A DNA stretch of 64,000 nt, taken from IMG/VR virus record IMGVR_UViG_3300028920_000022, positions 1 to 64,000 of that record; one strand, 5' to 3'. Under the pieces are notes generated by a model, which had not been told where the DNA came from, did not search any database, and worked only from the letters and a program-made list of their open reading frames with translations. Both the position numbers and the translations under genes were made by a program. Of this stretch, positions 5,480 through 51,078 are shown piece after piece (within the stretch, counting starts at the first letter, position 1; each line of letters opens with the position of its first letter).

Positions 5480-5499
5480 GTGATTATTTAGAAATTATT

Positions 5500-33725: not shown

Positions 33726-34020
33726 GGTTTTTGTTTTCCTTTTGTAAGAAGTCTTCTACTTCTTCCATATCTTCGTTAGTATAATTGGTGTCTATTCTAG
33801 TTTTCGGTTGAACAATTTTTTGTGCGATAACACTAGTAAGTTTGGAAAGACCCGTTGGTATTACGGCGATAATTAAGAAAAACAATGCAAGTGGCCAAAG
33901 TATCATAGTCATAGCCAACTCTTCGTCATCATCTGTTGGACGTTCGTGTCGCAAATCGTACCAACGCATTATAACACCTACAGGAATTATACCAGCCAAC
34001 CAAATTATCAAGAAAATCAT
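33715..34020 (-). CDS. two-TM membrane protein
   Basis: TM helices, ILWPL motif. Confidence 0.7.
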   Translation of the reverse strand: MIFLIIWLAGIIPVGVIMRWYDLRHERPTDDDEELAMTMILWPLALFFLIIAVIPTGLSKLTSVIAQKIVQPKTRIDTNYTNEDMEEVEDFLQKENKNLKL

Positions 34021-34286
34021 TTTATTACCTCGCGGATAATGAAATCTTTGCAGCTAATCATACGTCTTGCGAAAATTCCCTTATGTTCGTAGCCGGGGTT
34101 CACCTTTGATATCACAAATTCATCAGGATATTTTATTTTTCTTTTGTTTGTCTTAAGAGCGATCATGCTACATTTTCTACAATGATAATATTGTGCTTGG
34201 TAGGCAATATATGCAAGCCTATCTCCGGCAAGCTTTTCTAATTCTTTATAAGAAATCTTTCTAAAACGATGACCAAGAAGATTCAT
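34017..34286 (-). CDS. ZnF-IIE family protein
   Basis: LGH..CRKC..SCKDFIIREVIK. Confidence 0.8.
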   Translation of the reverse strand: MNLLGHRFRKISYKELEKLAGDRLAYIAYQAQYYHCRKCSMIALKTNKRKIKYPDEFVISKVNPGYEHKGIFARRMISCKDFIIREVIK

Positions 34287-34528
34287 TCTATTATCCCGCG
34301 AATAATACAATTGTTACAATTCATAGTGTCGTCTAATGGTTTTAGTTCGTAAAATCCGTTGCACCTTGACGCCTTCAACTGTGACTCTTTGTCGTATACA
34401 ATCAAGCCACACGTTTCACACCTGTAATAATCGCAACAAGATGGTATGGTTCCCGACCCTTGTTTATGAAAAATTTTTAGCACCACACCCCTTTCTATCG
34501 GAGAAAAGTTGTGCCCAAACATTTTCAT
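34283..34528 (-). CDS. ZnF-IIE family protein
   Basis: FGH..CETCG..CNNCIIRGIIE. Confidence 0.8.
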   Translation of the reverse strand: MKMFGHNFSPIERGVVLKIFHKQGSGTIPSCCDYYRCETCGLIVYDKESQLKASRCNGFYELKPLDDTMNCNNCIIRGIIE

Positions 34529-34764
34529 ACGATTATATCTTCCACGATGTAATCAGCACAGGTTAATGTTCCATCATAATCGTTCCAAAAACTAATAGTT
34601 GGATAGGTTAATATTTGTACTTTTCCGTTGTAAATTCTAAAACATCGTCCACAATTTCCGCAAGTTATTCCTAAACCAAACACCATATGATTAATAGAAA
34701 ATTTTCCATGACCATATTCTTGTAACCACATGATCCATAGATTGTCTATAATTTGGTCTGTCAC
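34525..34764 (-). CDS. ZnF-IIE family protein
   Basis: YGH..CGNCG..TCADYIVEDIIV. Confidence 0.8.
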   Translation of the reverse strand: MTDQIIDNLWIMWLQEYGHGKFSINHMVFGLGITCGNCGRCFRIYNGKVQILTYPTISFWNDYDGTLTCADYIVEDIIV

Positions 34765-35024
34765 GTCAAAACTTCTTTTATAACTATTTCAGCGCAAGGT
34801 GTGTTTGGTTTGATGTCGTATCTGGTTTTGTAACTGTTTTGATATAAGTTTATCACATAGGTTCCATCATAATCAGTGGTGCCTACGCAAAAATGATAGC
34901 CACATGTTTCGCATTTGTACACTATTCTGTCGTCATAATCGTCTTCAGCATGCCAAAATCTACGTTTCCCAATTTTGGTCAAGACATGACCTAAAGACTC
35001 TAATTTTTCTTTTTCTATTCTCAT
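34761..35024 (-). CDS. ZnF-IIE family protein
   Basis: LGH..CETCG..PCAEIVIKEVLT; alternative start 35057. Confidence 0.75.
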   Translation of the reverse strand: MRIEKEKLESLGHVLTKIGKRRFWHAEDDYDDRIVYKCETCGYHFCVGTTDYDGTYVINLYQNSYKTRYDIKPNTPCAEIVIKEVLT

Positions 35025-35053
35025 GTTATTACCGCTGTGACTATCCCAAGCAC

Positions 35054-35311
35054 TCATTTGATTACGTCTTCCACACAAACATCGTTGCAAAGTGGTAGAA
35101 ACCCACCATCTATTTCAGATCCTTTTATGTACAAACAATCCAAGCGCTTGAAACGATGGGTTTCTATTCTTACATAAAATGTTTCAAATGGGCTGTATAT
35201 GCCGAATACACATCCACAAATAACACATTCCCAGTACGTTTTGTTGTATTGCAAATCATGACCGTGCAGTTCAATAACACTTATTGCGTGTTTTAGTTGT
35301 ATGTCGTTCAT
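35054..35311 (-). CDS. ZnF-IIE family protein
   Basis: HGH..CVICG..LCNDVCVEDVIK. Confidence 0.8.
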   Translation of the reverse strand: MNDIQLKHAISVIELHGHDLQYNKTYWECVICGCVFGIYSPFETFYVRIETHRFKRLDCLYIKGSEIDGGFLPLCNDVCVEDVIK

Positions 35312-35520
35312 TCTATTACGTCTTTGATACAAAGCAAATTGCACTCAAGTAGTTTCTTGGTTTTTACAATTCTGCCTTGGTATATAGCGTTGAATGATTT
35401 TGTTGGAGCACCGCGTCCTTTGAACATTTCTGTTCCACAATTCTCGCAGGTATACCATTCAAATTTGCTGTTTGTTCTTGTGTGGCGCAACAAGTGCCCT
35501 TTGTATTTGATAACTATCAA
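35308..35520 (-). CDS. ZnF-IIE family protein
   Basis: KGH..CENCG..ECNLLCIKDVIE. Confidence 0.8.
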   Translation of the reverse strand: MIVIKYKGHLLRHTRTNSKFEWYTCENCGTEMFKGRGAPTKSFNAIYQGRIVKTKKLLECNLLCIKDVIE

Positions 35521-35720
35521 TGTTCGATTATGTGTTTGATTATGTATTCATTGCAATTGATTTTTTCAATAAGTGTACCCAACAGCGGGTGCACTTTTTT
35601 ATCCTCGGTGAAAATTGATAATTTGAATGTGCCATCGATAGTTTTGTAGAATACTAAGCCACAATTTTCGCACTTAAACAGATCGTGGCCTCTGTATAAC
35701 TTTAGATCATGCCCGTTCAT
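35517..35720 (-). CDS. ZnF-IIE family protein
   Basis: NGH..CENCG..NCNEYIIKHIIEH. Confidence 0.8.
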   Translation of the reverse strand: MNGHDLKLYRGHDLFKCENCGLVFYKTIDGTFKLSIFTEDKKVHPLLGTLIEKINCNEYIIKHIIEH

Positions 35721-35929
35721 TTGATTATGCTCTGAATGAGAAATTCGTTACAGGTTATAAGTCCAAAATGACACTCTTCACACATATCTTCCGTATAAAC
35801 AATAACCTTATTTCCAAACGTATAAAACATATTATTAAACCGGAAGTCTGCGCAAATACCACAGGTTTTGCATTTATAACACCAGTCTTCGTCCGTTGCC
35901 TCCCAACTATGAGTGTCCCAAGCGTTCAT
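35717..35929 (-). CDS. ZnF-IIE family protein
   Basis: DTH..CKTCG..TCNEFLIQSIIK. Confidence 0.8.
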   Translation of the reverse strand: MNAWDTHSWEATDEDWCYKCKTCGICADFRFNNMFYTFGNKVIVYTEDMCEECHFGLITCNEFLIQSIIK

Positions 35930-36285
35930 TCTAAATTCCTTAACAAATCTTCCACTTCTTGTGGAGATCTGGTTTCTGACGCTTTGGTTCGGCATTTTTG
36001 AAACAATTCTTTTCTGTTTTTGTATTCTTTCCTACACAACTTTGGCATTTGTCCAGACGCTATTCCTCCCAGCACATTAGATACTACCGACTTATCCCAT
36101 AAGGTGAAAGACAGAACCCACACCATATCGCTAACTTCTAATCTAGAATCTTCGTTGGCAGTTTTGATTAGTTCTTCAATTTCTACAAAATTTTGTGCTT
36201 CCGTTAAATCGTCTATGGTTTCAAGCAGAAAATCAATTTTTTCTGTACTGGTTTCTAACGCAAAATATTTGTCCCAAAAATTCAT
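35926..36285 (-). CDS. non-family helical protein inserted in the array
   Basis: ATGA-coupled on both sides, no motif. Confidence 0.7.
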   Translation of the reverse strand: MNFWDKYFALETSTEKIDFLLETIDDLTEAQNFVEIEELIKTANEDSRLEVSDMVWVLSFTLWDKSVVSNVLGGIASGQMPKLCRKEYKNRKELFQKCRTKASETRSPQEVEDLLRNLE

Positions 36286-36497
36286 TCGATTATTTCCCTG
36301 ATCAGAAAATCGTTGCAACTCACTTCAGATAATAGTTTTCCACCAAATGGTTGATTCAAATATATATTCCTAGAAACGAAATATGCACCGTTTTTATAAA
36401 TTTTATCATGCCAAACTACAATACCACACACATCACATTTGTAATATTCTAAATCTCCCAAGTACTCCGCATCAAAACGTCTAAGTTTGTGAGTCAT
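36282..36497 (-). CDS. ZnF-IIE family protein
   Basis: THKL..CDVCG..SCNDFLIREIIE. Confidence 0.8.
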   Translation of the reverse strand: MTHKLRRFDAEYLGDLEYYKCDVCGIVVWHDKIYKNGAYFVSRNIYLNQPFGGKLLSEVSCNDFLIREIIE

Positions 36498-36751
36498 TCT
36501 ATTATATCACGAATCGTCAAATCGTTATTAGAAATACAGGGCTGTACTTTGGAAATATAATCAACGTATATTTGATACTTTTTCCATGGAGTTTTCCGTT
36601 GCTCTTCTCGCATTTTCCCGAAACCCTCTGGGTCTTTTTCTAACGCAAGTTTGTTTAGTTCCTGAGTTGTGCATCGACATCTCAAACAAGCATAATTATG
36701 CTCGTCATAAAACTGTGCTTTCGGAACCCAAAATGCGTGGAAAATTGTCAT
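36494..36751 (-). CDS. ZnF-IIE family protein
   Basis: FHAF..CLRC..PC..LTIRDIIE. Confidence 0.8.
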   Translation of the reverse strand: MTIFHAFWVPKAQFYDEHNYACLRCRCTTQELNKLALEKDPEGFGKMREEQRKTPWKKYQIYVDYISKVQPCISNNDLTIRDIIE

Positions 36752-36969
36752 TCTATAACGTTTTTGATGATAAACTCGTCACAGCTAATGCTTTCCAGTG
36801 GTGTTACGTGCGGTTGATGTCCATTCAAAGTAGAAACGAAGTTGTTTCCCCCAGATTGGTACACTATAATACCACAATTTTCGCAAATTCTGTAAGCACC
36901 CCCGGCGCCCATATGTCCTTTGAATTTATCCATTTCTTGGATAGTAACATGTCTAAGTTTGTGACTCAT
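36748..36969 (-). CDS. ZnF-IIE family protein
   Basis: SHKL..CENCG..SCDEFIIKNVIE. Confidence 0.8.
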   Translation of the reverse strand: MSHKLRHVTIQEMDKFKGHMGAGGAYRICENCGIIVYQSGGNNFVSTLNGHQPHVTPLESISCDEFIIKNVIE

Positions 36970-37108
36970 TCTATGATATCCTTAATGATTTGCTCAGCAC
37001 AATTAATTGAATCGACAGATGTCACAGAAAACCAATTGTTGCGATCATGAACCTCTGTTGGTCTCATGCCCATTTTGTACCACACTTTTTGAAAAATGTC
37101 AACATCTG
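36966..37108 (-). pseudogene. 5'-truncated ZnF-IIE remnant
   Basis: frame ends INCAEQIIKDIIE but lacks the H/CxxC half. Confidence 0.55.
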
Positions 37109-37363
37109 TTATTCAATAATATATTTGATAATTTCTTCGTCTTGAATTGTTTGGCACGGTCTTAAATCATCTTTCCCACCAGTGCCAGGAAAACCATATA
37201 GGTGTATTTCCGAAAACACTTTTCCATCGTAAATTGAAGATAATATGTGCATATGAATACCACAGTTGCGACACGTGTAATATCTTTTGAAATTTGTTTC
37301 GATAAATTGGTGCCCCAGCTCATGCAAAAACTTTTCTGTGTATATTTCGCGAATCTTTTTCAT
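37109..37363 (-). CDS. ZnF-IIE family protein
   Basis: LGH..CRNCG..PC..IIKYIIE. Confidence 0.8.
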   Translation of the reverse strand: MKKIREIYTEKFLHELGHQFIETNFKRYYTCRNCGIHMHILSSIYDGKVFSEIHLYGFPGTGGKDDLRPCQTIQDEEIIKYIIE

Positions 37364-37578
37364 TCTATGATGTCCTTAATCATCACCTCTGTACAAGTCA
37401 TAAACCCATCAAATATATCGTTTCCTACTGTTGTTACATTATAATAGCTTTTCCAAGGTGTAAGCAATTCTTTCCATAAACGTGCTCCGCAATTGCGACA
37501 TAAATAGTTGGTGCCGTTTGGATAAACTATTATGGGAGTAAGATTATGTCCCAAATTTTCAAATTCCTTCAAGGTCAT
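37360..37578 (-). CDS. ZnF-IIE family protein
   Basis: LGH..CRNCG..TCTEVMIKDIIE. Confidence 0.8.
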   Translation of the reverse strand: MTLKEFENLGHNLTPIIVYPNGTNYLCRNCGARLWKELLTPWKSYYNVTTVGNDIFDGFMTCTEVMIKDIIE

Positions 37579-37820
37579 TCTATTATTTCTCTAATTATAT
37601 CTTCTGCCATAATCTTTTTGAATGTGGCGCAATCTACCTCTTCTGCATAATCGCAATCTATTTTTTTCCTGTGAATACCTGAGATTACGTTGTTGCTACA
37701 AACTAATAACATACATTTTTTGCATATTCTATACTGCAAATCGGGACCAATAATACCTTTGTTGTGTTTGTGTAAATAATTCAATTCTTTTTTAGTAATA
37801 TCTCTAAATTTGTGGCTCAT
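37575..37820 (-). CDS. ZnF-IIE family protein
   Basis: MSHKFRDITK..CKKC..IIREIIE. Confidence 0.8.
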   Translation of the reverse strand: MSHKFRDITKKELNYLHKHNKGIIGPDLQYRICKKCMLLVCSNNVISGIHRKKIDCDYAEEVDCATFKKIMAEDIIREIIE

Positions 37821-38044
37821 GTGATTATGTCCTTAATTATTACTTCGTTACATTTGATAGAAGATAAAAAGACCCGGTTGCCTTTGCTGTTTAGATTACT
37901 ACGCGACCATCGCATAGATATAAGCCATGTTTTGTGGCTTGTTCCCCAAAACACCTCTACACCACAATGTTGGCATCTATAATATTGCACAGACGTACCA
38001 GGATCATAATATGTGGCAAGCACATGATTTTCAACCTTAATCAT
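37817..38044 (-). CDS. ZnF-IIE family protein
   Basis: NH..CQHCG..KCNEVIIKDIIT. Confidence 0.8.
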   Translation of the reverse strand: MIKVENHVLATYYDPGTSVQYYRCQHCGVEVFWGTSHKTWLISMRWSRSNLNSKGNRVFLSSIKCNEVIIKDIIT

Positions 38045-38289
38045 TCTATTATTTCCCTGATTATATCATTTAACATGGTGCGTTTAAATGTGTCGCAATT
38101 TACCTCATCTATTCTTCTGTGCAAACCCAGCTTATCCGCATGAATATTTGAAACCCAATTTGTCCCATGGACTAACAGCAAACACTTATCACATATTTGG
38201 TATTGCAAACGACAACCAATTATTTTAGGGTAGTGCCTGGAAAAATAGTTCAATTCTTCTTTGGTAATATCTCTAAACTTGTGACTCAT
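38041..38289 (-). CDS. ZnF-IIE family protein (close paralog of 37575)
   Basis: MSHKFRDITK..CDKC..IIREIIE. Confidence 0.8.
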   Translation of the reverse strand: MSHKFRDITKEELNYFSRHYPKIIGCRLQYQICDKCLLLVHGTNWVSNIHADKLGLHRRIDEVNCDTFKRTMLNDIIREIIE

Positions 38290-38495
38290 TCTATTATTTC
38301 CTTGATGATCACATCATCACACCGCAGATCCTTTAGATATACTTGGAAAACCTTATGCGATCCCCGCCACCACTCACCAATAACCCAAGTATTTTTGCTG
38401 TTCTTAAACACCTCAATCCCACAATTAACACAGTAATAATATGTCTCAAATGGATGTGACATTTTCACCAAATTATGATTTTTAAACCTAATCAT
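38286..38495 (-). CDS. ZnF-IIE family protein
   Basis: NH..CVNCG..RCDDVIIKEIIE. Confidence 0.8.
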   Translation of the reverse strand: MIRFKNHNLVKMSHPFETYYYCVNCGIEVFKNSKNTWVIGEWWRGSHKVFQVYLKDLRCDDVIIKEIIE

Positions 38496-38705
38496 TTGAT
38501 TATTCCCAAAACAATAATATCGTTACAGTTGAGTTGTTCCAAACTGCTAGAATAGGTTTTGTTTGCGACACACCAATGCGTTGATATACGCCACCTTTTC
38601 GAGCCTTTATATACCTCTACGCCACAATTGCGACAGACAAAATATTGGATACCTAGCGCCTCCGCGCAGCGTGATTTGATCAAATCATGCCCAAAATATC
38701 TTCAT
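38492..38705 (-). pseudogene. frameshifted ZnF-IIE gene
   Basis: ATG AAG ATA TTT TGG GCA TGA; removing one T restores MKIFGHDLIKSRC.. Confidence 0.7.
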
Positions 38706-38929
38706 TTAATTATCCCCATGATAATGTAATCGTTGCATGTTATAGTTTCTGCAAAATCGTTTTGATATTTATATGCAATCGGATCGTCCATAGAAACATA
38801 TATTTTGTTCCTAACACAACCAGCTATGAGTCCTTTGTTGTGCCAACACATCATGCCGCATATAGAACAAATTAATTTATCCTCTTGCGTAAATAGTTTG
38901 TGTGTACCACACTGGATTGTTTTTGTCAT
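38702..38929 (-). CDS. ZnF-IIE family protein
   Basis: GTH..CSICG..TCNDYIIMGIIK. Confidence 0.8.
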   Translation of the reverse strand: MTKTIQCGTHKLFTQEDKLICSICGMMCWHNKGLIAGCVRNKIYVSMDDPIAYKYQNDFAETITCNDYIIMGIIK

Positions 38930-39177
38930 TTGATTATGTCAGCTATGATAACATCATCACAGGTTATACACTCTGGGCTTTCAAATTTGCTGCTTTTTAT
39001 TTGATTCACTCCGGATATTGAAAGTGTTTCTGCAAAAGAATAGGCGATTAAACCACATGTATCACAAATAAAATACATAGCAGTGTGGCTTCCGGCGCAC
39101 CAGTTGTATGTTGGATGTTTCACCTTTGCCTGTTTAAGGCACCCTATTTCGTGAAAATTATGTGTACCTATTTTCAC
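38926..39177 (-). CDS. ZnF-IIE family protein (MKIGTH subfamily)
   Basis: CDTCG..TCDDVIIADIIK. Confidence 0.82.
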   Translation of the reverse strand: MKIGTHNFHEIGCLKQAKVKHPTYNWCAGSHTAMYFICDTCGLIAYSFAETLSISGVNQIKSSKFESPECITCDDVIIADIIK

Positions 39178-39428: not shown

Positions 39429-39650
39429 ACGATTATTTCCCGGATTATTACATCAGTACAGGTCGTATCTTCAATGGAAGAAAATGTTTTTTTGGAATCC
39501 GTTGCTATAAGAAATTAACTCTGGAGAATTATACCCATATACAACCAAACCACAGTTAGCACATTTGTAATATTTGTCATGCTTCGATATAAAATAATTG
39601 GGTAGAGATTTTGGATCTATTTCCACAAAATTATGTGTGCCAATTTTCAT
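39425..39650 (-). pseudogene. frameshifted ZnF-IIE gene (A7 tract)
   Basis: A7 at 39487-39493; A6 restores ..QKTFSSIEDTTCTDVIIREIIV. Confidence 0.75.
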
Positions 39651-40621: not shown

Positions 40622-40839
40622 TCAATTACCTCTTTGATAATTAGTTCTCGATATTCTTTGCAGCTTACGTTTTCCAAAGTTTCGCCAGGCACACAAAAAT
40701 TGCATTGCGAAATGTAGATTATTCCACTTCTATACCGCAGGACAATCAAACCACATGTAACACATTCAAAATAGTCAGCAGTAACTGCCCCTTTTGATGG
40801 ATTTTTTATTGGATAAAACGTATGGGTACCAAGTTTCAT
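40618..40839 (-). CDS. ZnF-IIE family protein
   Basis: MKLGTH..CVTCG..SC..LIIKEVIE; alternative start 40890. Confidence 0.8.
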   Translation of the reverse strand: MKLGTHTFYPIKNPSKGAVTADYFECVTCGLIVLRYRSGIIYISQCNFCVPGETLENVSCKEYRELIIKEVIE

Positions 40840-40886
40840 TCGATTATGTCCCTTGGCAGAATCAATTTTGAAGAATTTATCTCCAG

Positions 40887-41087
40887 TCATTTGATTATTT
40901 CTCGAATTATCCACTCATCACAACTTATTTGGTCTGGACAGATTCCCACTCCGAAATAACCCGGATCCCCATTATTAACAACCCAGTAGCCTAAATACCC
41001 ACTCCAAACATACATTCCACATTTTGTACATATATAGATCCGCTCTTTCTCCGTTCGTTCCAATATGTGTGTTCCGAGCTGTTTCAC
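40887..41087 (-). CDS. ZnF-IIE family protein
   Basis: LGTH..CTKCG..SCDEWIIREIIK. Confidence 0.82.
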   Translation of the reverse strand: MKQLGTHILERTEKERIYICTKCGMYVWSGYLGYWVVNNGDPGYFGVGICPDQISCDEWIIREIIK

Positions 41088-42649: not shown

Positions 42650-42891
42650 TCTATTATTTCACGAATGATAAAATCATCACAGCTAATTTCCTTAGCCAAT
42701 CTTCTTTTTTCTCCCCTTTCTGTTATCTTAAACGCTGTCTTGTAACCACAAATAACAGAAATGTATTTTGTATCACCAAAGGCTATTAACCCGCATTCAC
42801 AACACCTATAATATGTAAGACCAGGAGAAAACTCCTCCCGATCTTTTTCTCCGTCTTCTATTTTTCGAAATTTGTGTTCCCGTGTTGTCAT
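42646..42891 (-). CDS. ZnF-IIE family protein
   Basis: EHKF..CCECG..SCDDFIIREIIE. Confidence 0.82.
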   Translation of the reverse strand: MTTREHKFRKIEDGEKDREEFSPGLTYYRCCECGLIAFGDTKYISVICGYKTAFKITERGEKRRLAKEISCDDFIIREIIE

Positions 42892-43100
42892 TCGATTATT
42901 TCCCGTATTATCCAATCATTACAACTGATTTCTGCAGGATATACCAAAGATGAGTCGGAACTGTAGGAAATTAGATAACGATTTTTGTACTGCCATGATT
43001 CGAATACTATTATTCCACAATTGATACACCGAAAATATCTATCGTTATTACGTTTATACGGATCCAATGCCGGTTCAAACTCGTGGGTTCCTATTTTCAT
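42888..43100 (-). CDS. ZnF-IIE family protein
   Basis: MKIGTH..CINCG..SCNDWIIREIIE. Confidence 0.82.
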   Translation of the reverse strand: MKIGTHEFEPALDPYKRNNDRYFRCINCGIIVFESWQYKNRYLISYSSDSSLVYPAEISCNDWIIREIIE

Positions 43101-43318: not shown

Positions 43319-43530
43319 ACCAAAATCTCATGAATAATGAATTCTTCGCACGTCATGTCTTCAGCAAATTTGCGAGTTCCCGAATTCGTTTTGTAAACGT
43401 TCCCATTCATTAAAGATATCCAATATTCTCCCCGCGAATTACGAAATATTATCATACCACACTTTGTACAACTAAACCTCATACCAATTTCAAATTTGCG
43501 TATTCCAACTATGTGCGTCCCGATTTTCAT
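43315..43530 (-). CDS. ZnF-IIE family protein
   Basis: MKIGTH..CTKCG..TCEEFIIHEILV. Confidence 0.82.
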   Translation of the reverse strand: MKIGTHIVGIRKFEIGMRFSCTKCGMIIFRNSRGEYWISLMNGNVYKTNSGTRKFAEDMTCEEFIIHEILV

Positions 43531-43745
43531 TCGATTATACACCTTATTACGTATTCGTCACATGTTATTTCGGTCCCCAACATCCGCGTGCCATCATCTT
43601 TTATAATATTTTTCATGTCCGAATGCGCCGAAACTGCTAAGTTACCTCTAGTGTACGAATATAAAATTATACCGCACTCTGTACACTGATAATAAACATC
43701 ATCATCCTTCCATGGAATTAACTTGTGCGTCCCTACTCTCTTCAT
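43527..43745 (-). CDS. ZnF-IIE family protein
   Basis: VGTH..CTECG..TCDEYVIRCIIE. Confidence 0.82.
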   Translation of the reverse strand: MKRVGTHKLIPWKDDDVYYQCTECGIILYSYTRGNLAVSAHSDMKNIIKDDGTRMLGTEITCDEYVIRCIIE

Positions 43746-43966
43746 TTGATTATGCTCGCGATTATATACTCTTTACAGGTAATTTCGTGAGCTTCTTTCT
43801 TTATTGGTACACCGTTACAGATTTTAGAATCCAACCCAAAACCACAAAATGCTGAAATATGTAGTGTTTCGGTTGTTCCCGCGTTATACGTTATTAACCC
43901 ACACTCTTCACAAATATAATACCTTTCCATATCCCATTTCCTAAACCTGTGCGTACCGTATTTCAT
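43742..43966 (-). CDS. ZnF-IIE family protein
   Basis: MKYGTH..CEECG..TCKEYIIASIIK. Confidence 0.82.
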   Translation of the reverse strand: MKYGTHRFRKWDMERYYICEECGLITYNAGTTETLHISAFCGFGLDSKICNGVPIKKEAHEITCKEYIIASIIK

Positions 43967-44172
43967 TTAATTATCTCTCGTATTATCCATTCATTACAAC
44001 TGATTTTCTCAACTGGTATCTGCCCTATCCCATTCCCATTTCCTAAAGACGTTACAAAACCATTGCTAGTTGTGTATACAAGTAATCCACAGTTTTCACA
44101 TACAAAATAATCGTCCGGATAGCCAATCTCAAACTTGTCTTCTTTAGTTATTGGTCTGAATTCGTGAGCCAT
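43963..44172 (-). CDS. ZnF-IIE family protein
   Basis: AHEF..CENCG..SCNEWIIREIIK. Confidence 0.82.
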   Translation of the reverse strand: MAHEFRPITKEDKFEIGYPDDYFVCENCGLLVYTTSNGFVTSLGNGNGIGQIPVEKISCNEWIIREIIK

Positions 44173-44385
44173 CTATTCTATTATCTCCCGGATTATCCAT
44201 TCCTCACAATTTATGCTATCTGCACGCATATAATGATGCAGCTTATTCGTTGCACAAATGTAATACTCCCTCATTCTCGTTGACCAACAAACCATGCCAC
44301 AATGTATGCATCTGTAATATTTGACGTATATTTCATCACTGGGTTTTTCAAAAATGCGCTCCAAATTATGCGTGCCACAAATCAC
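44173..44385 (-). CDS. ZnF-IIE family protein
   Basis: CGTH..CIHCG..NCEEWIIREIIE. Confidence 0.82.
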   Translation of the reverse strand: MICGTHNLERIFEKPSDEIYVKYYRCIHCGMVCWSTRMREYYICATNKLHHYMRADSINCEEWIIREIIE

Positions 44386-44627
44386 TCAATTATCCCCCTT
44401 ATTATTACTTCTCTGCAGTTTAGATCAGCCGCCTTCCTCCTTAAACCCCCATTATGTGTGAAACTCTCTCCACCGTTTATGTTGGATATCCAAAACTCTC
44501 CGTCCTTCGAATAAACCACTAAATCGCAATCCTCACATACCCAGTAGTCTAACAATTGTGGAGCTTGTGTTCGTATATTCATCGCTTCGTTGTCAGATTC
44601 GCTTAGCTTTATTAACCTGTGACTCAT
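44382..44627 (-). CDS. ZnF-IIE family protein
   Basis: SHRL..CEDC..NCREVIIRGIIE. Confidence 0.82.
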   Translation of the reverse strand: MSHRLIKLSESDNEAMNIRTQAPQLLDYWVCEDCDLVVYSKDGEFWISNINGGESFTHNGGLRRKAADLNCREVIIRGIIE

Positions 44628-44842
44628 TTGATTACTTCCCTAATTATCCAGTCACTGCATGTCGTTTCTTCAGGAGACCACATAAATTTGTCAGAAATGT
44701 TAGATATTATATATTTACCAGTGTGTATTCCCTTGAATATAACTAAACCACACTCTTTGCATTTATAATATTCCTCCTGGTGCGGCTCTCCGGCACATAA
44801 TGGCTTGCCGGTTGACTCAAATTCATGCGTCCCGATTTTCAT
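44624..44842 (-). CDS. ZnF-IIE family protein
   Basis: MKIGTH..CKECG..TCSDWIIREVIK. Confidence 0.82.
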   Translation of the reverse strand: MKIGTHEFESTGKPLCAGEPHQEEYYKCKECGLVIFKGIHTGKYIISNISDKFMWSPEETTCSDWIIREVIK

Positions 44843-45081
44843 TCGATTATTTCTCGTATTATCCACTCATCACAACTGATTTCTTCCGCTTTTCTCCTAC
44901 GAAAATTATCCTCCATAGCTACCGCCCCACACCGACTCGAAATGTACTTCGTAGAAGACCTGCCTCTGAAGCGAAATGCTAACATTCCACACGCTTTACA
45001 CTCATAATATTCGTTTTCCTCAGGAAAATTGGCTCTAGCGAACTTTCCTTCGTGTCTTATTTTTTCGAATTTGTGTGACAC
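44839..45081 (-). CDS. ZnF-IIE family protein
   Basis: SHKF..CKACG..SCDEWIIREIIE. Confidence 0.82.
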   Translation of the reverse strand: MSHKFEKIRHEGKFARANFPEENEYYECKACGMLAFRFRGRSSTKYISSRCGAVAMEDNFRRRKAEEISCDEWIIREIIE

Positions 45082-45084
45082 TGT

Positions 45085-45282
45085 CTACTTGATTATCTCC
45101 CTCACTACCCATTCGTTACAACTTATCTCTCCAGGATCAAGTAACGCAGGATCAGACATCGTGGATATTATATGTTTTCCATCACTAGCTTCAAATATTA
45201 CAATTCCACACTCTTTGCATTTATAATATCGATATCGATATCTCCCGTTCATCTTTTCAAACTTGTGCGTTCCAATTTTCAT
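45085..45282 (-). CDS. ZnF-IIE family protein
   Basis: MKIGTH..CKECG..SCNEWVVREIIK. Confidence 0.82.
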   Translation of the reverse strand: MKIGTHKFEKMNGRYRYRYYKCKECGIVIFEASDGKHIISTMSDPALLDPGEISCNEWVVREIIK

Positions 45283-45500
45283 TCGATTATTTCCCTGATT
45301 ATCCGTTCCCGACACCCTATACTCCCTATTAATTCCTGCCTCTCCGAACAGGCTAGCGATGTCCAAAACTCTCCGTCATCATTTTCGAATATTATTATCT
45401 CACATTCCTGGCATATCCAGTACAAAGAAGAAGGTCCAATATTAAACTTTGAACGCTCTTCCTCAGATGTCTTACGAAATGTGTGATCCCCTATCTTCAT
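45279..45500 (-). CDS. ZnF-IIE family protein
   Basis: MKIGDH..CQEC..GCRERIIREIIE. Confidence 0.82.
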   Translation of the reverse strand: MKIGDHTFRKTSEEERSKFNIGPSSLYWICQECEIIIFENDDGEFWTSLACSERQELIGSIGCRERIIREIIE

Positions 45501-45736
45501 TCGATTATCTCCCGGATTATAAACTCATCGCAACTTATTATTTCAGGACTTTTACCCACAAATCTAAGCTCTAATCCGCTCAATAATGATATCCCTACTC
45601 GGTCTCTTTCCCTGTATGCTACTATCCCACATTCTGAACATTGATAATATGTTTTAAATAAATTGTGGATTTTCGGATGCTTTCGGCTTATCTTTTCTAC
45701 CTCTTCTTGGGTTAATTCTTTGAATTTATGCGTCAT
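45497..45736 (-). CDS. ZnF-IIE family protein
   Basis: THKF..CSECG..SCDEFIIREIIE. Confidence 0.82.
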   Translation of the reverse strand: MTHKFKELTQEEVEKISRKHPKIHNLFKTYYQCSECGIVAYRERDRVGISLLSGLELRFVGKSPEIISCDEFIIREIIE

Positions 45737-45966
45737 TTGATTATTTCCTGAATTATAAAATCTCGGCAGCTTATATATTCAGGGTTGTAAATGTTTTGAC
45801 GATGAAATTCTGATATACTACATTTGCCATTGAAATCATAAATTATAATACCACATTCTTCGCATTTGTAGTATTTGGCATCGTGGTTCGGTATGAATCC
45901 ATAATTACGTAACTTTTGTACCTCTCCTTTCCTCATTTCTTTGAATTTGTGCGTCCCTATCTTCAT
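45733..45966 (-). CDS. ZnF-IIE family protein
   Basis: MKIGTH..CEECG..SCRDFIIQEIIK. Confidence 0.82.
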   Translation of the reverse strand: MKIGTHKFKEMRKGEVQKLRNYGFIPNHDAKYYKCEECGIIIYDFNGKCSISEFHRQNIYNPEYISCRDFIIQEIIK

Positions 45967-46205
45967 TCGATTATCTCCCGGATTATTAATTCATTGCAGT
46001 TAATGTCCTCCGCTTTGTACCTGCCACCATCGTGAAAAGCAAATTCGTGATACCCAGATACAACTAATCTCCCAGTATCTGGTTTCTCAAATGCCACCAA
46101 TCCACATTCCTCACATTTGTAATAATCCATTTTCTCCGGTGTAAACCTGTAAGACTGTAAACCATCCCTCTCCTCAATACTTAATTTCCGAAACCTGTGA
46201 TTCAC
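45963..46205 (-). CDS. ZnF-IIE family protein
   Basis: NHRF..CEECG..NCNELIIREIIE. Confidence 0.82.
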   Translation of the reverse strand: MNHRFRKLSIEERDGLQSYRFTPEKMDYYKCEECGLVAFEKPDTGRLVVSGYHEFAFHDGGRYKAEDINCNELIIREIIE

Positions 46206-46405
46206 TTGATTATCCCCATTATTATCACATCCTCACAGCTTATCTCCTCAGGATATGTCGGTAATTCCTGATAATTGTAATTCCTTATCGATATCAACCT
46301 ACTCTTGTTCCAAAATACCCACAATCCACATTCGCTACATTGATAATACCTGTCCTCTTTCGGAAATAATCTGTGAGTCCCAGCTTTCTTCAAAATTGTG
46401 CCCAC
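46202..46405 (-). CDS. ZnF-IIE family protein
   Basis: AGTH..CSECG..SCEDVIIMGIIK. Confidence 0.8.
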   Translation of the reverse strand: MGTILKKAGTHRLFPKEDRYYQCSECGLWVFWNKSRLISIRNYNYQELPTYPEEISCEDVIIMGIIK

Positions 46406-46478
46406 ACCCTTTCTAATCCTTTTCCTAACAGCTTTTCTTTTCTTAACCCGCCCCTTGCCCTAAATATATAAAACGCCT

Positions 46479-46718
46479 TTAAATTAAAATTTCCCTTATT
46501 ATAAAATCGTCGCAACTTATGTCAGACGCTAGGATGGGAAGTGTGTCGCAAACATAGTTCGCCGCTGAAATGTGGTATTCCCCCTCATACAATACTTCGT
46601 ATATTATGAGTCCACAATTCTTACATTGATGATAATTGTTTCCCTTTAAATGTCTGTACCTTTCTCCTAATTCTTCTAAATCCATTCTCCTACATTCATG
46701 CGTTCCAATCTTCTTCAC
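46479..46718 (-). CDS. ZnF-IIE family protein
   Basis: GTG start; IGTH..CKNCG..SCDDFIIREILI. Confidence 0.8.
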   Translation of the reverse strand: MKKIGTHECRRMDLEELGERYRHLKGNNYHQCKNCGLIIYEVLYEGEYHISAANYVCDTLPILASDISCDDFIIREILI

Positions 46719-46918
46719 TTGATTATTTCCCGTATTATCCATTCATTACAACTGATTTGCTCTATCGGTATCTGCCCTATTCCTTTTTGGTTCTCAAGTG
46801 AGGTAAGATATTCTTTCCCGTATTTGAAAAGTATTAATCCGCATTCTTTGCACCTGTAATATTTGTAACAATCATCCCCCGTTGTTATTTCGGTCAAATT
46901 GTGCCCGTTTATCTTCAT
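46715..46918 (-). CDS. ZnF-IIE family protein
   Basis: NGH..CKECG..SCNEWIIREIIK. Confidence 0.82.
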   Translation of the reverse strand: MKINGHNLTEITTGDDCYKYYRCKECGLILFKYGKEYLTSLENQKGIGQIPIEQISCNEWIIREIIK

Positions 46919-47163
46919 TTAATTATCTCCCTTATAATTATCTCCTCACAACTCATATCCTTAACCTCGTACCATCTGATTTCGTTTAATTCGGAAATTC
47001 CCCAATTTTTGCTTTTCTTGCTTTTGTATATTATTATCCCACATTCCTTACACCTGTAATAATACTTGGTTAAATCATGTACACCAAATCCATGCGCTTT
47101 ACATATCTCCACTAACTCTTTGTTCCTTATTAATTTGCACTTTTCGTGTGTCCCTATCCTCAT
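46915..47163 (-). CDS. ZnF-IIE family protein
   Basis: MRIGTH..CKECG..SCEEIIIREIIK. Confidence 0.82.
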   Translation of the reverse strand: MRIGTHEKCKLIRNKELVEICKAHGFGVHDLTKYYYRCKECGIIIYKSKKSKNWGISELNEIRWYEVKDMSCEEIIIREIIK

Positions 47164-47405
47164 TTTATTATTCCCATCACTATCCAATCGTTACATGTTA
47201 TCCCCTCAGGTCTTCTATAAGTAAATTCGTGATTGCCATTTAAATCTGAAATGTAATATTGTAGCACTCCCTCTAATAAAATAATTCCACAAATAGTACA
47301 TTTATAATAACGCTCGCCTTCTGGTACTCCGCTAAATCCTAAACTTTTTGCCAATGCATCTACATCTTGTACTGGCTTTAATTCGTGCGTACCAAGTTTC
47401 TTCAT
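47160..47405 (-). CDS. ZnF-IIE family protein
   Basis: LGTH..CTICG..TCNDWIVMGIIK. Confidence 0.82.
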   Translation of the reverse strand: MKKLGTHELKPVQDVDALAKSLGFSGVPEGERYYKCTICGIILLEGVLQYYISDLNGNHEFTYRRPEGITCNDWIVMGIIK

Positions 47406-47638
47406 TTAATAATCTCCAGGATTATAAACTCATTGCAGCTTATATTCTTCGCAAAATTATACTTTGTTACCCCAGATATCATGAACTCGCCTTCCTTAGT
47501 CTCAAATGCTATCATCCCACATTCTGCGCATCGGTAATATTTGAATGTTCTGTCCATCCATATGTATCCGTTATCCTTTAAATAATCGAACTCTGCCCCG
47601 CTTATCCCCTCCAAATTGTGCGTTCCCACCGCTTTCAC
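47402..47638 (-). CDS. ZnF-IIE family protein
   Basis: VGTH..CAECG..SCNEFIILEIIK. Confidence 0.82.
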   Translation of the reverse strand: MKAVGTHNLEGISGAEFDYLKDNGYIWMDRTFKYYRCAECGMIAFETKEGEFMISGVTKYNFAKNISCNEFIILEIIK

Positions 47639-47859
47639 TCTATTATCTCCCGTATGATTATCTCTTCACAACTTATCTCTTCAGGTCTTTTAGGTAAATC
47701 TCTCCCGTTTAATTCGGAAATAACCATCCTCCCTAATCCGTCACTCTCGTCATATACCAATAATCCGCATTCGCTACACCTGTAATAATAATCCTCAAAT
47801 ACTACTCCGTTATAAAACTCCCTGTCCTCGTCAGTTAATTCCTTGAATCTGTGATTCAT
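47635..47859 (-). CDS. ZnF-IIE family protein
   Basis: NHRF..CSECG..SCEEIIIREIIE. Confidence 0.82.
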   Translation of the reverse strand: MNHRFKELTDEDREFYNGVVFEDYYYRCSECGLLVYDESDGLGRMVISELNGRDLPKRPEEISCEEIIIREIIE

Positions 47860-48122
47860 TCGATTATCTCTCTTATTACTAATTCGTTGTATTTTATTGC
47901 GTATTCATCACAAGTTATTACTTCAGAACTCTTGCCAATAAATACCACACTTAATCCGCTCATCCATGATATTAGAAATTCACCGTATTCTTCGTATACT
48001 ACTAATCCACATTCCTTACATTTATAATAATTTTCCAATATCTCCGGATTACAGAAACCTAAAGCTTGTGTTTGTAATTCCTTTACCTCATCCTCCTCCA
48101 TCTTTTCGAAATTGTGCCTCAT
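47856..48122 (-). CDS. ZnF-IIE family protein
   Basis: RHNF..CKECG..TC..LVIREIIE. Confidence 0.82.
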   Translation of the reverse strand: MRHNFEKMEEDEVKELQTQALGFCNPEILENYYKCKECGLVVYEEYGEFLISWMSGLSVVFIGKSSEVITCDEYAIKYNELVIREIIE

Positions 48123-48319
48123 TCGATTATTCCCCGTATTATCCATTCGTTACAACTTATTAAAGATGGATCTTTTCCAAGATATTCAAGGCTGTTATTA
48201 AAATGGGACATTAACATTTTATCGTCCTCTAAATATAATACCATCCCACATTCTTCGCATTTGTAATGGTATTGTGATAATTCAGCGATTTTCTTCATCC
48301 TGTGCGTCCCTATCTTCAT
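48119..48319 (-). CDS. ZnF-IIE family protein
   Basis: MKIGTH..CEECG..SCNEWIIRGIIE. Confidence 0.82.
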   Translation of the reverse strand: MKIGTHRMKKIAELSQYHYKCEECGMVLYLEDDKMLMSHFNNSLEYLGKDPSLISCNEWIIRGIIE

Positions 48320-48348
48320 CGGAAAAACCTACATCCCGTTTTATATAT

Positions 48349-48573
48349 TTACACTATTATCTCACCTATGATAAAATCATCGCAACTTATCTTCAAAGGA
48401 TTTTGTGGGTATGAACCGTTGATACGCGAAACTACAAACTCTTCGCTAAGATAGTATAAAATTATCCCACATGTGCTGCATTTGTAATATGTCCAATTTG
48501 TTTTGGGACATTGTGGGTGGTATGGATCTTTTATTTCTATTAATTCGTGCGTCCCTACCTCGATTACTTGCAT
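48349..48573 (-). CDS. ZnF-IIE family protein (first gene of array)
   Basis: VGTH..CSTCG..SCDDFIIGEIIV. Confidence 0.8.
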   Translation of the reverse strand: MQVIEVGTHELIEIKDPYHPQCPKTNWTYYKCSTCGIILYYLSEEFVVSRINGSYPQNPLKISCDDFIIGEIIV

Positions 48574-48889
48574 ATTCAACCCCGTTCTCGAATTTTAAAA
48601 GCTTGAAACGTAGTTTCTTTTTTATTTTTTCTTATCGTAATCCAATATTTTAAAACATTTTTGGGCATCTAAGTGCTCGAAATTAAAGGACTTTTTCACT
48701 TGGCTATGAGAGCTTATCACAGTTTGTAGGAAAAAACAAGGGGTTTTGTGAAGGGGGATTATTATAAGTTTGTAGAGAGATTGGTTTTAAATAATTGTAC
48801 AGGGTTTTTGCTTCGGTTATTCCCCAAGGTTTCAGGTTTCCCCAGTTTCTACGGCTTCTTCAGCTCTGGTTTCTACGGTTTACTCCAGT

Positions 48890-51060: not shown

Positions 51061-51078
51061 GAGAATCTGGAACATATC

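What the first reader, a model, noticed from the sequence alone, without database searches (positions are those of the whole stretch)
34017..48579. Dual-coding junction: the tail codons are also the SD plus ATGA coupling signal, and a possible recombination site
Seen: junctions read about GGATAATACGGGAAATAATCGAATGA on the minus strand. The R-E/K-E/M-G codons supply GGGA/AAGGA/GGAG about 8-10 nt before the next ATG, and the stop overlaps that start (ATGA/GTGA) at almost every junction. Orphan junction scraps fused to gene starts occur at 35021-35057 (MSAWDSH + GCGGTAATAACATGA) and 40836-40890 (AGGGACATAATCGAATGA), and a truncated cassette lies at 36966-37108. Inference: each ~230-bp unit is a self-coupling cassette that can be added, deleted or shuffled via the shared ~25-nt junction (gene accordion; integron-like but with no integrase in the window).
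Basis: partly seen in the sequence, partly recalled or inferred. Interest (0 to 1): 0.75.

Follow-up and report, generated by a model that had tools for sequence, protein, structure and literature searches.

The report
Coupled array of tiny zinc-protein genes
A 459-kb phage from marine sediment carries 62 head-to-tail copies of a tiny zinc-binding protein gene, and the last codons of each copy also act as the ribosome landing pad and start signal for the next; this is textbook translational coupling in an unusually regular form, not an integron-like cassette system.

Summary
On the minus strand of 34017-48579 lie 63 back-to-back small genes. Sixty-two belong to one family or carry its tail; one is unrelated. 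The median unit is 230 bp. Of 63 junctions, 56 are 4-nt stop/start overlaps (47 ATGA, 8 GTGA, 1 TTGA).

The proteins (about 75 aa) have an invariant His + Cys-x-x-Cys + Cys set and end in a conserved C-terminal helix (C-x-[DE]-x-I-I-[RK]-[ED]-I-I-[EK]).

The tail is first of all a protein feature:
- Its upstream codons vary freely at synonymous sites.
- It persists on 32 uncoupled genes and on proteins with no detectable family relationship.
- It is conserved in distant relatives.

The last ~13 nt also carry synonymous bias that strengthens pairing with the anti-Shine-Dalgarno sequence and favours ATG. This bias appears in coupled tails and is weak or absent in uncoupled ones. It recurs in two related phages.

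So "dual coding" is supported, but it is ordinary translational coupling. Non-family overlapping genes in this phage do the same.

"Integron-like" is not supported: the genome has no tyrosine recombinase and the junctions form no hairpins. "Accordion" holds only over long times:
- About 62 versus about 13 copies between shared anchors in a relative.
- All paralogs are at most 58% identical.
- Near-identical strains are collinear.

Exchange at junctions is plausible but circumstantial.

The parts
34017..48579 (-). Tandem array of 63 small genes. Sixty-two are family or tail-bearing units of about 65-98 aa: His near the N-terminus, YYxCxxCG in the middle, Cys plus an I-I-[RK]-[ED]-I-I-[EK] tail at the end. 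It is probably one long polycistronic unit.
   Evidence: ORF lists and curated gene calls. Alignment A1: three invariant Cys and one nearly invariant His. Only two weak terminator-like sites on the coding strand.
42888..42914 (-). Example of a canonical junction. Codons W-I-I-R-E-I-I-E plus TGA contain GGGA at -13 to -10 and the next gene's ATG overlapping the stop (ATGA).
   Evidence: Junction listing, pattern search, information profile.
48580..49330 (-). Upstream intergenic region from which the array is probably transcribed. It holds sigma-70-like sites at 48790-48761 and 49266-49239, a field of short tandem repeats at 48895-49039, and a block (49199-49325) that is 84% identical to the relative L010.
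   Evidence: The promoter function is inferred, not shown.
40836..40890 (-). Orphan tail remnant. A 16-codon mini-ORF (...ILPRDIIE*) sits in the frame of the preceding gene and is followed by a second ATGA. Read in the other frame it forms an N-terminal extension of gene 40618-40890.
   Evidence: Three-frame translation.
35021..35057 (-). Orphan remnant. Seven N-terminal codons (MSAWDSH) resemble the start of gene 35717-35929. They are fused out of frame to a tail end (...AVIT*) plus ATGA. This looks like an internal deletion of a cassette.
   Evidence: Three-frame translation; paralog N-terminus MNAWDTH.
36966..37108 (-). Truncated cassette. Only the C-terminal half is kept (...SINCAEQIIKDIIE*), with no His or CxxC part. 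The upstream gene ends in TAA, so the usual overlapping ATG is missing.
39429..39650 (-). Frameshifted cassette. The body stops at 39471 and the tail (...TCTDVIIREIIV*) continues in the +1 frame. The shift lies at an A7 run.
   Evidence: The sequence is identical in the independent Logan contig L018.
35926..36285 (-). Unrelated 119-aa gene sitting inside the array. It has no tail, yet it ends ...AGG AAT TTA GAA TGA, which gives its own internal SD plus an ATGA overlap.
   Evidence: The same gene order is kept in the 99.3%-identical strain contig L009.
37575..38495 (-). Old two-unit tandem duplication (A-B-A'-B'). 38286-38495 resembles 37817-38044 (41% aa), and 38041-38289 resembles 37575-37820 (59% aa).
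   Evidence: Best-paralog table.
33715..34020 (-). Gene for a 101-aa predicted membrane protein without the tail. It is coupled by ATGA to the last cassette and marks the low-coordinate end of the array.
   Evidence: Pfam: no hit.
3683..7138 (-). Second cluster of the same superfamily (subfamily with an LGH...CxxC...C plus tail layout). Several junctions are again 4-nt overlaps. More members and unrelated tail-bearing genes are scattered over 1-33 kb.
   Evidence: Genome-wide HMM and tail census: 117 family ORFs and 111 tail-bearing ORFs.

Best explanation
The region is a long operon made of one expanded gene family, and its genes are translationally coupled.

The protein (fold and metal binding are predicted only). 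Each gene encodes a protein of about 75 aa with a His/Cys3 zinc site. The protein ends in a short amphipathic helix that starts at the last Cys.

The tail. Selection on the protein keeps this tail. The tail ends in ...[RK]-[ED]-I-I-[EK] followed by TGA. Its codons can therefore also spell a Shine-Dalgarno-like GGA/GGAG at -12 to -9, an A/T-rich unstructured spacer, and an ATG or GTG that shares three bases with the stop. Synonymous sites in the last ~13 nt are biased in that direction.

Inferred mechanism. A ribosome that terminates on one cistron, or a new 30S subunit, starts the next cistron 1 nt upstream of the stop. All units of the array are then made from one transcript.

How the array evolved (shown by paralog comparison and remnants). 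It grew by tandem duplications of one, two and about ten units. It decays by internal deletions and frameshifts. This is birth-and-death evolution.

Exchange at junctions (inferred, not shown). The junction is the only DNA that stays alike between diverged units. This makes it the likely substrate for unequal crossing-over or short gene-conversion tracts. The phage's RecA/UvsX-like recombinase could catalyse these.

Function of the proteins. It is unknown. The strongly lineage-specific expansion, variable loops on a fixed scaffold, and the position at the head of a transcription block next to the divergent control region suggest a diversified set of host-interaction or takeover proteins.
For: Anatomy: 56/63 4-nt overlaps; unit median 230 bp.

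The phage uses SD sequences:
- AGGA/GGAG peak at -13 to -8 upstream of 637 non-family genes.
- Mean anti-SD duplex energy is -3.52 kcal/mol upstream of 316 long genes against -2.09 at internal control sites.

Synonymous tuning of the tail:
- Observed -4.24 against -3.08 +/- 0.30, 0/2000 resamplings.
- Arg at -5 is CGG or AGG in 19/30 against 33% in gene bodies.
- The last codon ends in A in 44/49 E/K cases.
- Third-position information rises only in the last 13 nt.

Natural control: the biases are present in 78 coupled tails and weak or absent in 32 uncoupled ones. The SD excess recurs in L010 (-5.40 against -3.35 +/- 0.53) and L013 (-4.86 against -3.92 +/- 0.49).

The junction is the least folded part of the mRNA. 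The 50-nt MFE is -3.4 against about -6 kcal/mol. The unpaired probability is 0.54 against 0.45, p = 1e-5.

Protein-level tail:
- Invariant C, C, C and nearly invariant H.
- AF2 pLDDT 91 with helix 67-76.
- Tail present on 18 ORFs without a family HMM hit, about 12 of them without CxxC.
- Tail conserved in metagenomic relatives.

Birth-and-death evolution:
- Nearest paralog lies within 2 units in 23% of genes (null 6%), and there is a period-10 block.
- 55/62 genes have their best hit inside their own array.
- Genome labels change 27 times on the tree against 45.1 +/- 2.4 in shuffles; a 21-member clade is found only in this phage.
- Four degenerate units.
- About 62 against about 13 copies between shared anchors.

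The junction as the shared homology:
- 93 exact repeat pairs of 14 nt or more against 1.2 in shuffles, about 72% centred on junctions, up to 32 nt.
- Linked synonymous tracts exceed the null: 17 nt or more in 12 pairs against 3.3 +/- 1.8; 20 nt or more in 6 against 0.8. They occur between cassettes whose bodies are not close.
Against: - No expression or ribosome data exist. Coupling is inferred from sequence only. The host and its anti-SD sequence are unknown; the canonical one was assumed.
- Paralogs are not independent samples, so the resampling P values are optimistic.
- One strong bias (Ile at -2 is ATC in 51% against 11% in bodies) is not seen in L010 or L013. It may reflect descent or homogenisation rather than function.
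- Weak sigma-70-like -35/-10 matches fall on many junctions, so internal transcription starts cannot be excluded.
- For recombination: the scars that can be seen have breakpoints mostly inside cassettes. Three close strain pairs show no cassette indel. The read/contig overlay gave only repeat cross-matches.
- The zinc site and the fold are predictions. No structural or family match gives a function.
Confidence: 0.72

Rival explanations
1. The junction is mainly a DNA-level recombination module. Units are added, removed or shuffled by exchange between the ~25-nt junctions, and the conserved peptide tail is largely a by-product of keeping that DNA alike.
For: - Exact repeats concentrate at junctions.
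- Long identical tail tracts exceed a null that keeps amino acids and position-specific codon use. They join cassettes with unrelated bodies, for example 41547 and 40887: a 29-nt run with body similarity at the median.
- The ATC bias at -2 is specific to this genome, as homogenisation would predict.
- Copy number differs four-fold from a relative.
- The tail sits on proteins with no detectable family relationship, as if spread by junction exchange.
- A RecA/UvsX-like gene is present.
Against: - Tail codons -7 and -6 vary freely at synonymous sites while the amino acids stay the same.
- The tail persists on 32 uncoupled, often solitary genes on both strands.
- It is conserved in relatives that share no other DNA similarity.
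- The helix begins at a putative zinc ligand.
- No paralog pair is recent (at most 58% aa).
- Close strains are collinear.
- Shared tracts are short (at most 32 nt).
Confidence: 0.2
2. The array is an integron-like system of promoterless cassettes captured by site-specific recombination at a conserved site.
For: The only support is a superficial likeness: many short same-strand units separated by a conserved ~25-nt element behind one upstream control region.
Against: - No tyrosine recombinase anywhere in the 458,729-bp record, while the same search finds one in all 14 control genomes.
- Junctions are the least structured part of the strand, so there is no imperfect inverted repeat of the attC kind.
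- All units are paralogs of one family rather than unrelated captured genes.
- The conserved element is coding sequence.
Confidence: 0.02
3. The tail is a shared protein tag: a docking, sorting or turnover signal read by one phage or host factor. That is why more than 100 proteins carry it. Its use as a ribosome-binding site is secondary. This complements the main explanation rather than excluding it.
For: - 111 ORFs end in the motif, including 18 without family HMM similarity. Among them are predicted membrane proteins (G000 155811-156146, 422998-423480) and repeat proteins in relatives (L014 1078-1785).
- The motif is kept where no gene is coupled.
- It is a predicted two-turn amphipathic helix.
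Against: - No partner is known.
- The complex prediction between neighbouring units gave no answer.
- In the family itself the helix may simply be part of the fold.
- The net charge is negative, unlike known membrane-targeting C-terminal helices (own knowledge).
Confidence: 0.3
4. The array is an assembly artefact, that is, collapsed or mis-joined repeats.
For: Unitigs of the Logan assembly break at the two 32-nt junction repeats. Depth differs between pieces: 22-27 against 53.7.
Against: - Units are strongly diverged (21-58% aa identity), so they cannot be mis-assembled copies.
- Two independent assemblies agree at 100% over 15 kb.
- A 99.3%-identical strain contig from another data set keeps the local order.
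Confidence: 0.02

Closest known systems
Translationally coupled overlapping cistrons (ATGA / TGATG overlaps with the Shine-Dalgarno sequence inside the upstream gene, as in the E. coli trp operon and many phage operons; own knowledge)
   Same: It shares the 4-nt stop/start overlap, the SD at the usual distance inside the upstream coding sequence, skewed codon choice at the 3' end of the upstream gene, and low mRNA structure at the junction. Non-family genes of this phage show the same design.
   Different: Here the upstream sequence is the same conserved peptide tail at about 55 successive junctions. The signal is therefore stereotyped and repeated every ~230 bp. Coupling itself was not measured.
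Integron gene cassettes (IntI integrase, attI, attC hairpin sites; own knowledge)
   Same: It has many short promoterless same-strand units behind one upstream control region.
   Different: There is no integrase and no hairpin-forming site. The units are paralogs rather than unrelated captured genes, and the shared element is coding sequence.
Gene accordions and multigene families of large DNA viruses (poxvirus K3L amplification, ASFV multigene families, giant-virus paralog arrays; own knowledge)
   Same: It shows tandem paralogs, lineage-specific expansion, large copy-number differences between relatives, and decayed copies.
   Different: No near-identical recent copies and no copy-number differences among close strains were seen. 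This is long-term birth-and-death evolution in a bacteriophage, not a rapid accordion.
Small zinc-ribbon / treble-clef-like domains (weak Pfam similarities: DUF7128, RYYR-CCHC, GRF-like zinc ribbon) and the repeated H...CxxCG modules of SLH/LRR cell-surface proteins
   Same: It shares a CxxCG knuckle preceded by aromatic residues and a His about 30 residues upstream. The family profile hits up to 30 repeats in such surface proteins.
   Different: All Pfam hits lie below the curated cut-offs. In the surface-protein module the third Cys lies upstream of CxxC, whereas in this family it lies at the start of the C-terminal helix. There is no fold match in PDB or AFDB.

Membership tests
Translationally coupled overlapping cistrons | Stop of the upstream gene overlaps or abuts the start of the downstream gene on the same strand | tested here: met
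   56 of 63 junctions are ATGA/GTGA/TTGA overlaps.
Translationally coupled overlapping cistrons | Ribosome-binding sequence for the downstream gene lies inside the upstream coding sequence at functional spacing | tested here: met
   GGA/GGAG lies at -12 to -9. Mean anti-SD energy is -4.24 kcal/mol, stronger than the phage's average gene (-3.52) and than synonymous resamplings (-3.08 +/- 0.30).
Translationally coupled overlapping cistrons | Downstream translation depends on translation or termination of the upstream cistron | not testable with these tools
   This needs reporters or ribosome profiling. No RNA run holding the sequence was found.
Integron cassette array | Tyrosine recombinase (IntI) next to the array | tested here: not met
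   PF00589 has no match in the whole 458,729-bp record, while the control genomes are all positive.
Integron cassette array | attC sites: imperfect inverted repeats that fold as hairpins between cassettes | tested here: not met
   The junction has the weakest folding of the unit (50-nt MFE -3.4 against about -6 kcal/mol).
Integron cassette array | Cassettes carry unrelated genes | tested here: not met
   62 of 63 units are one family or carry its tail.
Rapid gene accordion (recent adaptive amplification) | Near-identical tandem copies and copy-number variation within a population or among close strains | tested here: not met
   Best paralog identity is 21-58% aa. Three strain pairs at 99.3-99.8% identity are collinear over about 8 kb. 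The contig overlay was uninformative.
Birth-and-death multigene family | Tandem paralogs with local duplications, lineage-specific clades, and decayed copies | tested here: met
   Nearest paralog lies within 2 units in 23% of genes against a 6% null. There is a 21-member clade found only in this phage. Four degenerate units were found. About 62 against about 13 copies lie between shared anchors.
Zinc-ribbon-type metal-binding domain | Four conserved metal ligands, including a CxxC knuckle | tested here: met
   C35, C38 and C67 are invariant and H6 is at least 90% conserved in 59 paralogs. Metal binding itself was not testable.
Pfam DUF7128 / RYYR-CCHC (PF23447 / PF23674) | Score at or above the family's gathering threshold | tested here: not met
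   Best E-values are 0.0074 and 0.014, and bit scores are far below the cut-offs of 25.7 and 27.

The most novel reading that the evidence does not exclude
The C-terminal motif ...[DE]-x-I-I-[RK]-[ED]-I-I-[EK] is a phage-wide protein tag. More than 100 proteins of several folds with no detectable relationship carry it, and one dedicated phage or host machine reads it for sorting, assembly, packaging or timed turnover. The 62-gene array is then a diversified library of small zinc-scaffold effectors that all enter that pathway. The tag's codons have been co-opted as a built-in ribosome-binding site and as the homology that lets the library expand and exchange units.
Probability: 0.15. Interest if true: 0.8.

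Novelty: new member of a known kind. Interest (0 to 1): 0.45.

Why it matters
The mechanism is ordinary, but it shows clearly how one short sequence can serve both protein and translation. A conserved peptide tail fixes the amino acids, and the remaining synonymous freedom is spent on the next gene's ribosome-binding site and start codon. Coupled and uncoupled copies within the same genome provide a built-in control.

The array also documents a large, unannotated gene family with no Pfam or PHROG assignment: 117 copies in one 459-kb phage and hundreds more in metagenomes. It expands independently in related huge phages. Families of this kind are candidates for host takeover or counter-defence functions.

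The shared tail on proteins with no detectable family relationship is the one feature that could lead to something new.

Tried and rejected
- IMG/VR scans with the junction DNA pattern and with a family alignment found no relatives other than the record itself. The first alignment was too diverse to search with.
- The PDB and AFDB-cluster fold searches, the ESM Atlas look-up, PHROGs and Pfam gave no significant match.
- The complex prediction for two neighbouring units returned "no answer" and is not evidence either way.
- Only one run holds the sequence: the probable source, kept as contigs. Overlaying it on 42600-48600 gave "joints" with sides of 22-34 nt that all sit on junction repeats. 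I read these as repeat cross-matches, not variants. One low-depth 314-nt contig (depth 4) joins 47425 to 47635 with unknown letters between. It probably comes from a related strain and was not counted.
- Three literature searches found nothing on this family or on comparable phage arrays.
- An extended -10 reading of TGGATAAT was considered and dropped, because TG is one base out of register and Trp occurs in only 12 tails.
- I looked for an out-of-frame stop or start explanation for the ATC bias at -2 and found none.

Full report
**Source and setting**

The window is the first 64 kb of a 458,729-bp IMG/VR virus record (linear, CheckV completeness 100%) from a marine-sediment metagenome. It is therefore a huge phage.

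Bases 1-48,600 are transcribed leftwards, and so are about 410-459 kb at the other end of the record. GC skew and gene direction switch at about 48.6-50 kb.

The finding's interval starts immediately downstream of that divergent intergenic region.

**What is there**

On the minus strand of 34017-48579 lie 63 consecutive small ORFs. Sixty-two of them belong to one paralog family or carry its tail. One (35926-36285, 119 aa) is unrelated. Successive stops are a median of 230 bp apart.

In an alignment of 59 intact members, three Cys are invariant: the CxxC pair and one Cys 11 residues from the end. A His near the N-terminus is conserved in at least 90%. Mean pairwise identity to the reference member is only about 33%.

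AlphaFold2 with this alignment gives a confident small fold (pLDDT 91). It has an N-terminal hairpin, one helix, a three-stranded part around the CxxC knuckle, and a C-terminal helix at residues 67-76 that begins at the last Cys. That helix is the "tail".

No function can be assigned from known families:
- No Pfam family reaches its cut-off; the best weak hits are DUF7128 and RYYR-CCHC.
- There is no PHROG match.
- There is no significant fold match in PDB or the AFDB clusters, and no lead from the ESM Atlas.

**The junction observation holds**

Of 63 junctions, 47 are ATGA, 8 GTGA and 1 TTGA. Among non-family gene ends in the genome at most 39% have [A/G/T]TGA (p about 2e-16).

The seven exceptions include all five family genes in the array that end in TAA or TAG. 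Two further exceptions follow a frameshifted or truncated unit.

The "MDNTGNNRM"-type N-terminal extensions in raw ORF lists are simply the junction read in the next gene's frame. They start at the ATG inside GAA-TGG.

A fourth degenerate unit (39429-39650) is frameshifted at an A7 run.

Independent Logan contigs of the source run match 29647-40916 and 41549-45518 at 100%.

**Is the tail protein or DNA?**

It is mainly protein. Five observations support this:

1. Codons -7 and -6 (Ile-Ile) use ATA, ATT and ATC roughly as gene bodies do, and their third positions carry little information.
2. Genome-wide, 111 ORFs end in the motif. Thirty-two of them are not followed by an overlapping start, and many of these are solitary genes on either strand.
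3. Eighteen tail-bearing ORFs have no family HMM hit and about twelve lack CxxC. They include predicted membrane proteins. In relatives the tail also ends a repeat protein and a small unrelated protein.
4. A profile search of 1.84 billion cluster representatives finds 661 hits at E <= 0.001. Of the 150 best, 101 are small proteins, and the 54 of those not encoded by this genome end in the same tail.
5. Relatives share no DNA similarity with this array except 40-66-nt patches at the tails.

**Is it also a translation signal?**

Yes, as far as sequence can show.

The phage uses Shine-Dalgarno sequences. Its 637 non-family genes show an AGGA/GGAG peak at -13 to -8. Mean duplex energy with the canonical anti-SD is -3.52 kcal/mol upstream of 316 long genes, against -2.09 at internal control sites.

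At the 55 coupled family junctions the mean is -4.24. I resampled synonymous codons from the family's own body usage, keeping the amino acids and the last codon. This gives -3.08 +/- 0.30, and none of 2000 resamplings reaches the observed value.

The bias is visible in single codons:

| Position | Observed in tails | In gene bodies |
|---|---|---|
| Arg at -5 | CGG or AGG in 19/30 | 33% |
| Last codon, Glu | GAA 28, GAG 2 | GAA 65% |
| Last codon, Lys | AAA 16, AAG 3 | AAA 71% |
| Ile at -3 | ATA 83% | ATA 53% |

Third-position information rises only within the last 13 nt.

Tail-bearing genes that are not coupled provide a natural control:

| Measure | 78 coupled tails | 32 uncoupled tails |
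|---|---|---|
| Mean anti-SD energy (null) | -3.81 (-2.62 +/- 0.23) | -2.56 (-1.96 +/- 0.33) |
| ATA at -3 | 80% | 48% |
| ATC at -2 | 53% | 18% |

The SD excess recurs in two related phage contigs: L010 at -5.40 against -3.35 +/- 0.53, and L013 at -4.86 against -3.92 +/- 0.49.

The junction is also the least structured stretch of the transcript.

None of this is peculiar to the tail:
- The 146 non-tail junctions with 4-nt overlaps in the genome have a mean of -3.92.
- The unrelated gene inside the array ends ...AGG AAT TTA GAA TGA.

This is therefore the usual architecture of coupled genes. It looks striking here because the same peptide precedes every junction.

**Cassettes, integrons, accordions**

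The integron analogy fails on the features that could be tested:
- There is no tyrosine recombinase in the record.
- There are no hairpin sites at the junctions.
- The units are paralogs, not unrelated captured genes.

Expansion and contraction are real on long time scales. The contig L010 comes from a distant relative. It shares an 84%-identical upstream non-coding block (window 49199-49325), and its downstream genes are collinear with window 32832-27314. Between these anchors it has 4.2 kb with about 13 family genes. This phage has 16.4 kb with 62, and there is no one-to-one orthology.

Further evidence for lineage-specific growth:
- 55 of 62 genes have their best hit within their own array.
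- On a FastTree of 114 members from three phages the genome label changes 27 times, against 45.1 +/- 2.4 in shuffles. One clade of 21 members is found only in this phage. This is a short alignment and a quick method, so it is only indicative.
- Nearest paralogs lie within two units in 23% of genes (null 6%). A two-unit duplication (37575-38495) and a block of period ten units are visible.

There is no sign of recent amplification:
- The best paralog identity is 58%.
- Three pairs of near-identical strains are collinear: L009/window, L011/L013 and L014/L010, about 8 kb in all. Their only indels lie inside genes or in an upstream repeat protein.

**Recombination at the junction**

This part is plausible but not shown.

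In favour:
- There are 93 exact repeat pairs of 14 nt or more, against 1.2 expected. About 72% of their ends are centred within -30 to +15 of a stop, and the longest are 32 nt.
- I built a null that shuffles codons among cassettes with the same amino acid at the same tail position. It yields 3.3 +/- 1.8 pairs with an identical run of 17 nt or more and 0.8 +/- 0.9 with 20 nt or more. The observed counts are 12 and 6 (P = 0.002 and 0.004).
- Most of these pairs are not close in their bodies.
- The ATC bias at -2 is specific to this genome, which fits some homogenisation.
- A RecA/UvsX-like gene exists at 213968-214654.

Against, or neutral:
- The visible scars have at least one breakpoint inside a unit.
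- Clean junction-to-junction events would leave no scar, so they cannot be counted here.
- The contig overlay showed only repeat cross-matches.

**Function**

The function of the proteins is unknown. My best guess rests on four points:
- the position at the head of a transcription block;
- the lineage-specific expansion;
- a fixed metal scaffold with variable loops;
- decayed copies.

Together these suggest a diversified set of small host-interaction proteins. This is inference only.

The family profile also hits large SLH/LRR surface proteins that carry up to 30 H...CxxCG modules. In those modules the third Cys is placed differently, so I treat this as a lead, not as homology.

**Verdict**

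The "dual coding" idea is supported, but the mechanism is ordinary. The "integron-like" idea is rejected. The "accordion" idea is replaced by long-term birth-and-death evolution. Exchange at junctions remains open.

The less ordinary aspects are the size of the family (117 ORFs in one phage) and the shared tail on proteins with no detectable family relationship.

Noticed in passing
window 48895-49039 (and 49199-49325): The divergent intergenic region upstream of the array holds a field of short tandem repeats (periods 15-18, 33 and 51; units like AACCGAAAC/CGAATAAG). It also holds a block that is 84% identical to the relative L010. This could be an origin or a regulator-binding region.
   Followed up: partly
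window ~47635-55700 and 50000-64000: GC content jumps from about 37% to about 50% at about 50 kb, where gene direction switches. The Logan contig covering 47635 to about 55.7 kb has word depth 53.7, against 22-27 for the array contigs. Possible causes are a terminal repeat, a second strain, or a shared module.
   Followed up: no
G000 451588-451662 (-), 108016-108087 (+); window 3609-10034 (-): The phage has 16 tRNA genes, 8 of them in the window. They include tRNA-Ile(tat), which reads the ATA codon heavily used in the family. One is a predicted suppressor tRNA with anticodon tta, which would read the TAA stop.
   Followed up: partly
many junctions, e.g. window 44875-44846, 43133-43104, 42924-42895, 46751-46722 (-): The Ser-Cys-Asn/Asp codons and the Glu-Ile-Ile codons of the tail spell a weak sigma-70-like TTGTAA/TTGTGA - 18 nt - AATAAT/GATAAT (9 of 12 matches). 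The -10 element ends only 3 nt before the next ATG, so it could not serve that gene. Overall there are 89 sites against 67 +/- 8 in shuffles.
   Followed up: partly
window 7178-7615, 16997-17404, 17401-17901, 28615-28875, 32347-32820 (-); G000 155811-156146 (+), 422998-423480 (-); L014 1078-1785: The same C-terminal motif (...I-I-[KRQ]-[DE]-I-I-[EKT]) ends proteins that show no family similarity and no CxxC. Among them are predicted membrane proteins and, in a relative, a repeat protein.
   Followed up: partly
tail codon -2 at coupled junctions, whole genome: Ile at -2 is ATC in about half of coupled tails, against 11-14% elsewhere. This bias is absent in the relatives L010 and L013, and no reading-frame or start-context reason was found for it.
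   Followed up: partly
G000 385.8-388.6 kb (+): A second array of about a dozen family genes lies on the opposite strand. It has the same tail, and 9 of 11 junctions are ATGA/GTGA.
   Followed up: partly
proteins P0001, P0003, P0007, P0008 (metagenomic): Large SLH-, LRR- and Listeria-Bacteroides-repeat-bearing surface proteins contain up to about 30 tandem ~51-aa modules (H...ATC...YWxCxxCG). These modules match the N-terminal two thirds of the family profile.
   Followed up: partly
window 2581-3501, 20329-21360, 22721-23464, 24537-25460, 25777-26442, 29332-29826 (-): The same leftward block encodes two radical-SAM proteins, a Thg1-like tRNA-His guanylyltransferase, a polynucleotide kinase/phosphatase-like protein, a Pol-beta-type nucleotidyltransferase and a cytidylyltransferase-like (NMNAT-type) protein. 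Tail-bearing small genes are interleaved among them.
   Followed up: partly
window 55719-56099 (+): This ORF is made almost entirely of Thr-Ala repeats (low-complexity sequence) and lies in the GC-rich rightward block.
   Followed up: no
L010 1584-1892; protein P0035: Some relatives have lost the stop at a junction. In one case the tail is followed by 7 extra codons (...IIKGIIEIFTGDKL*). In another, a 135-aa protein consists of two fused units.
   Followed up: no
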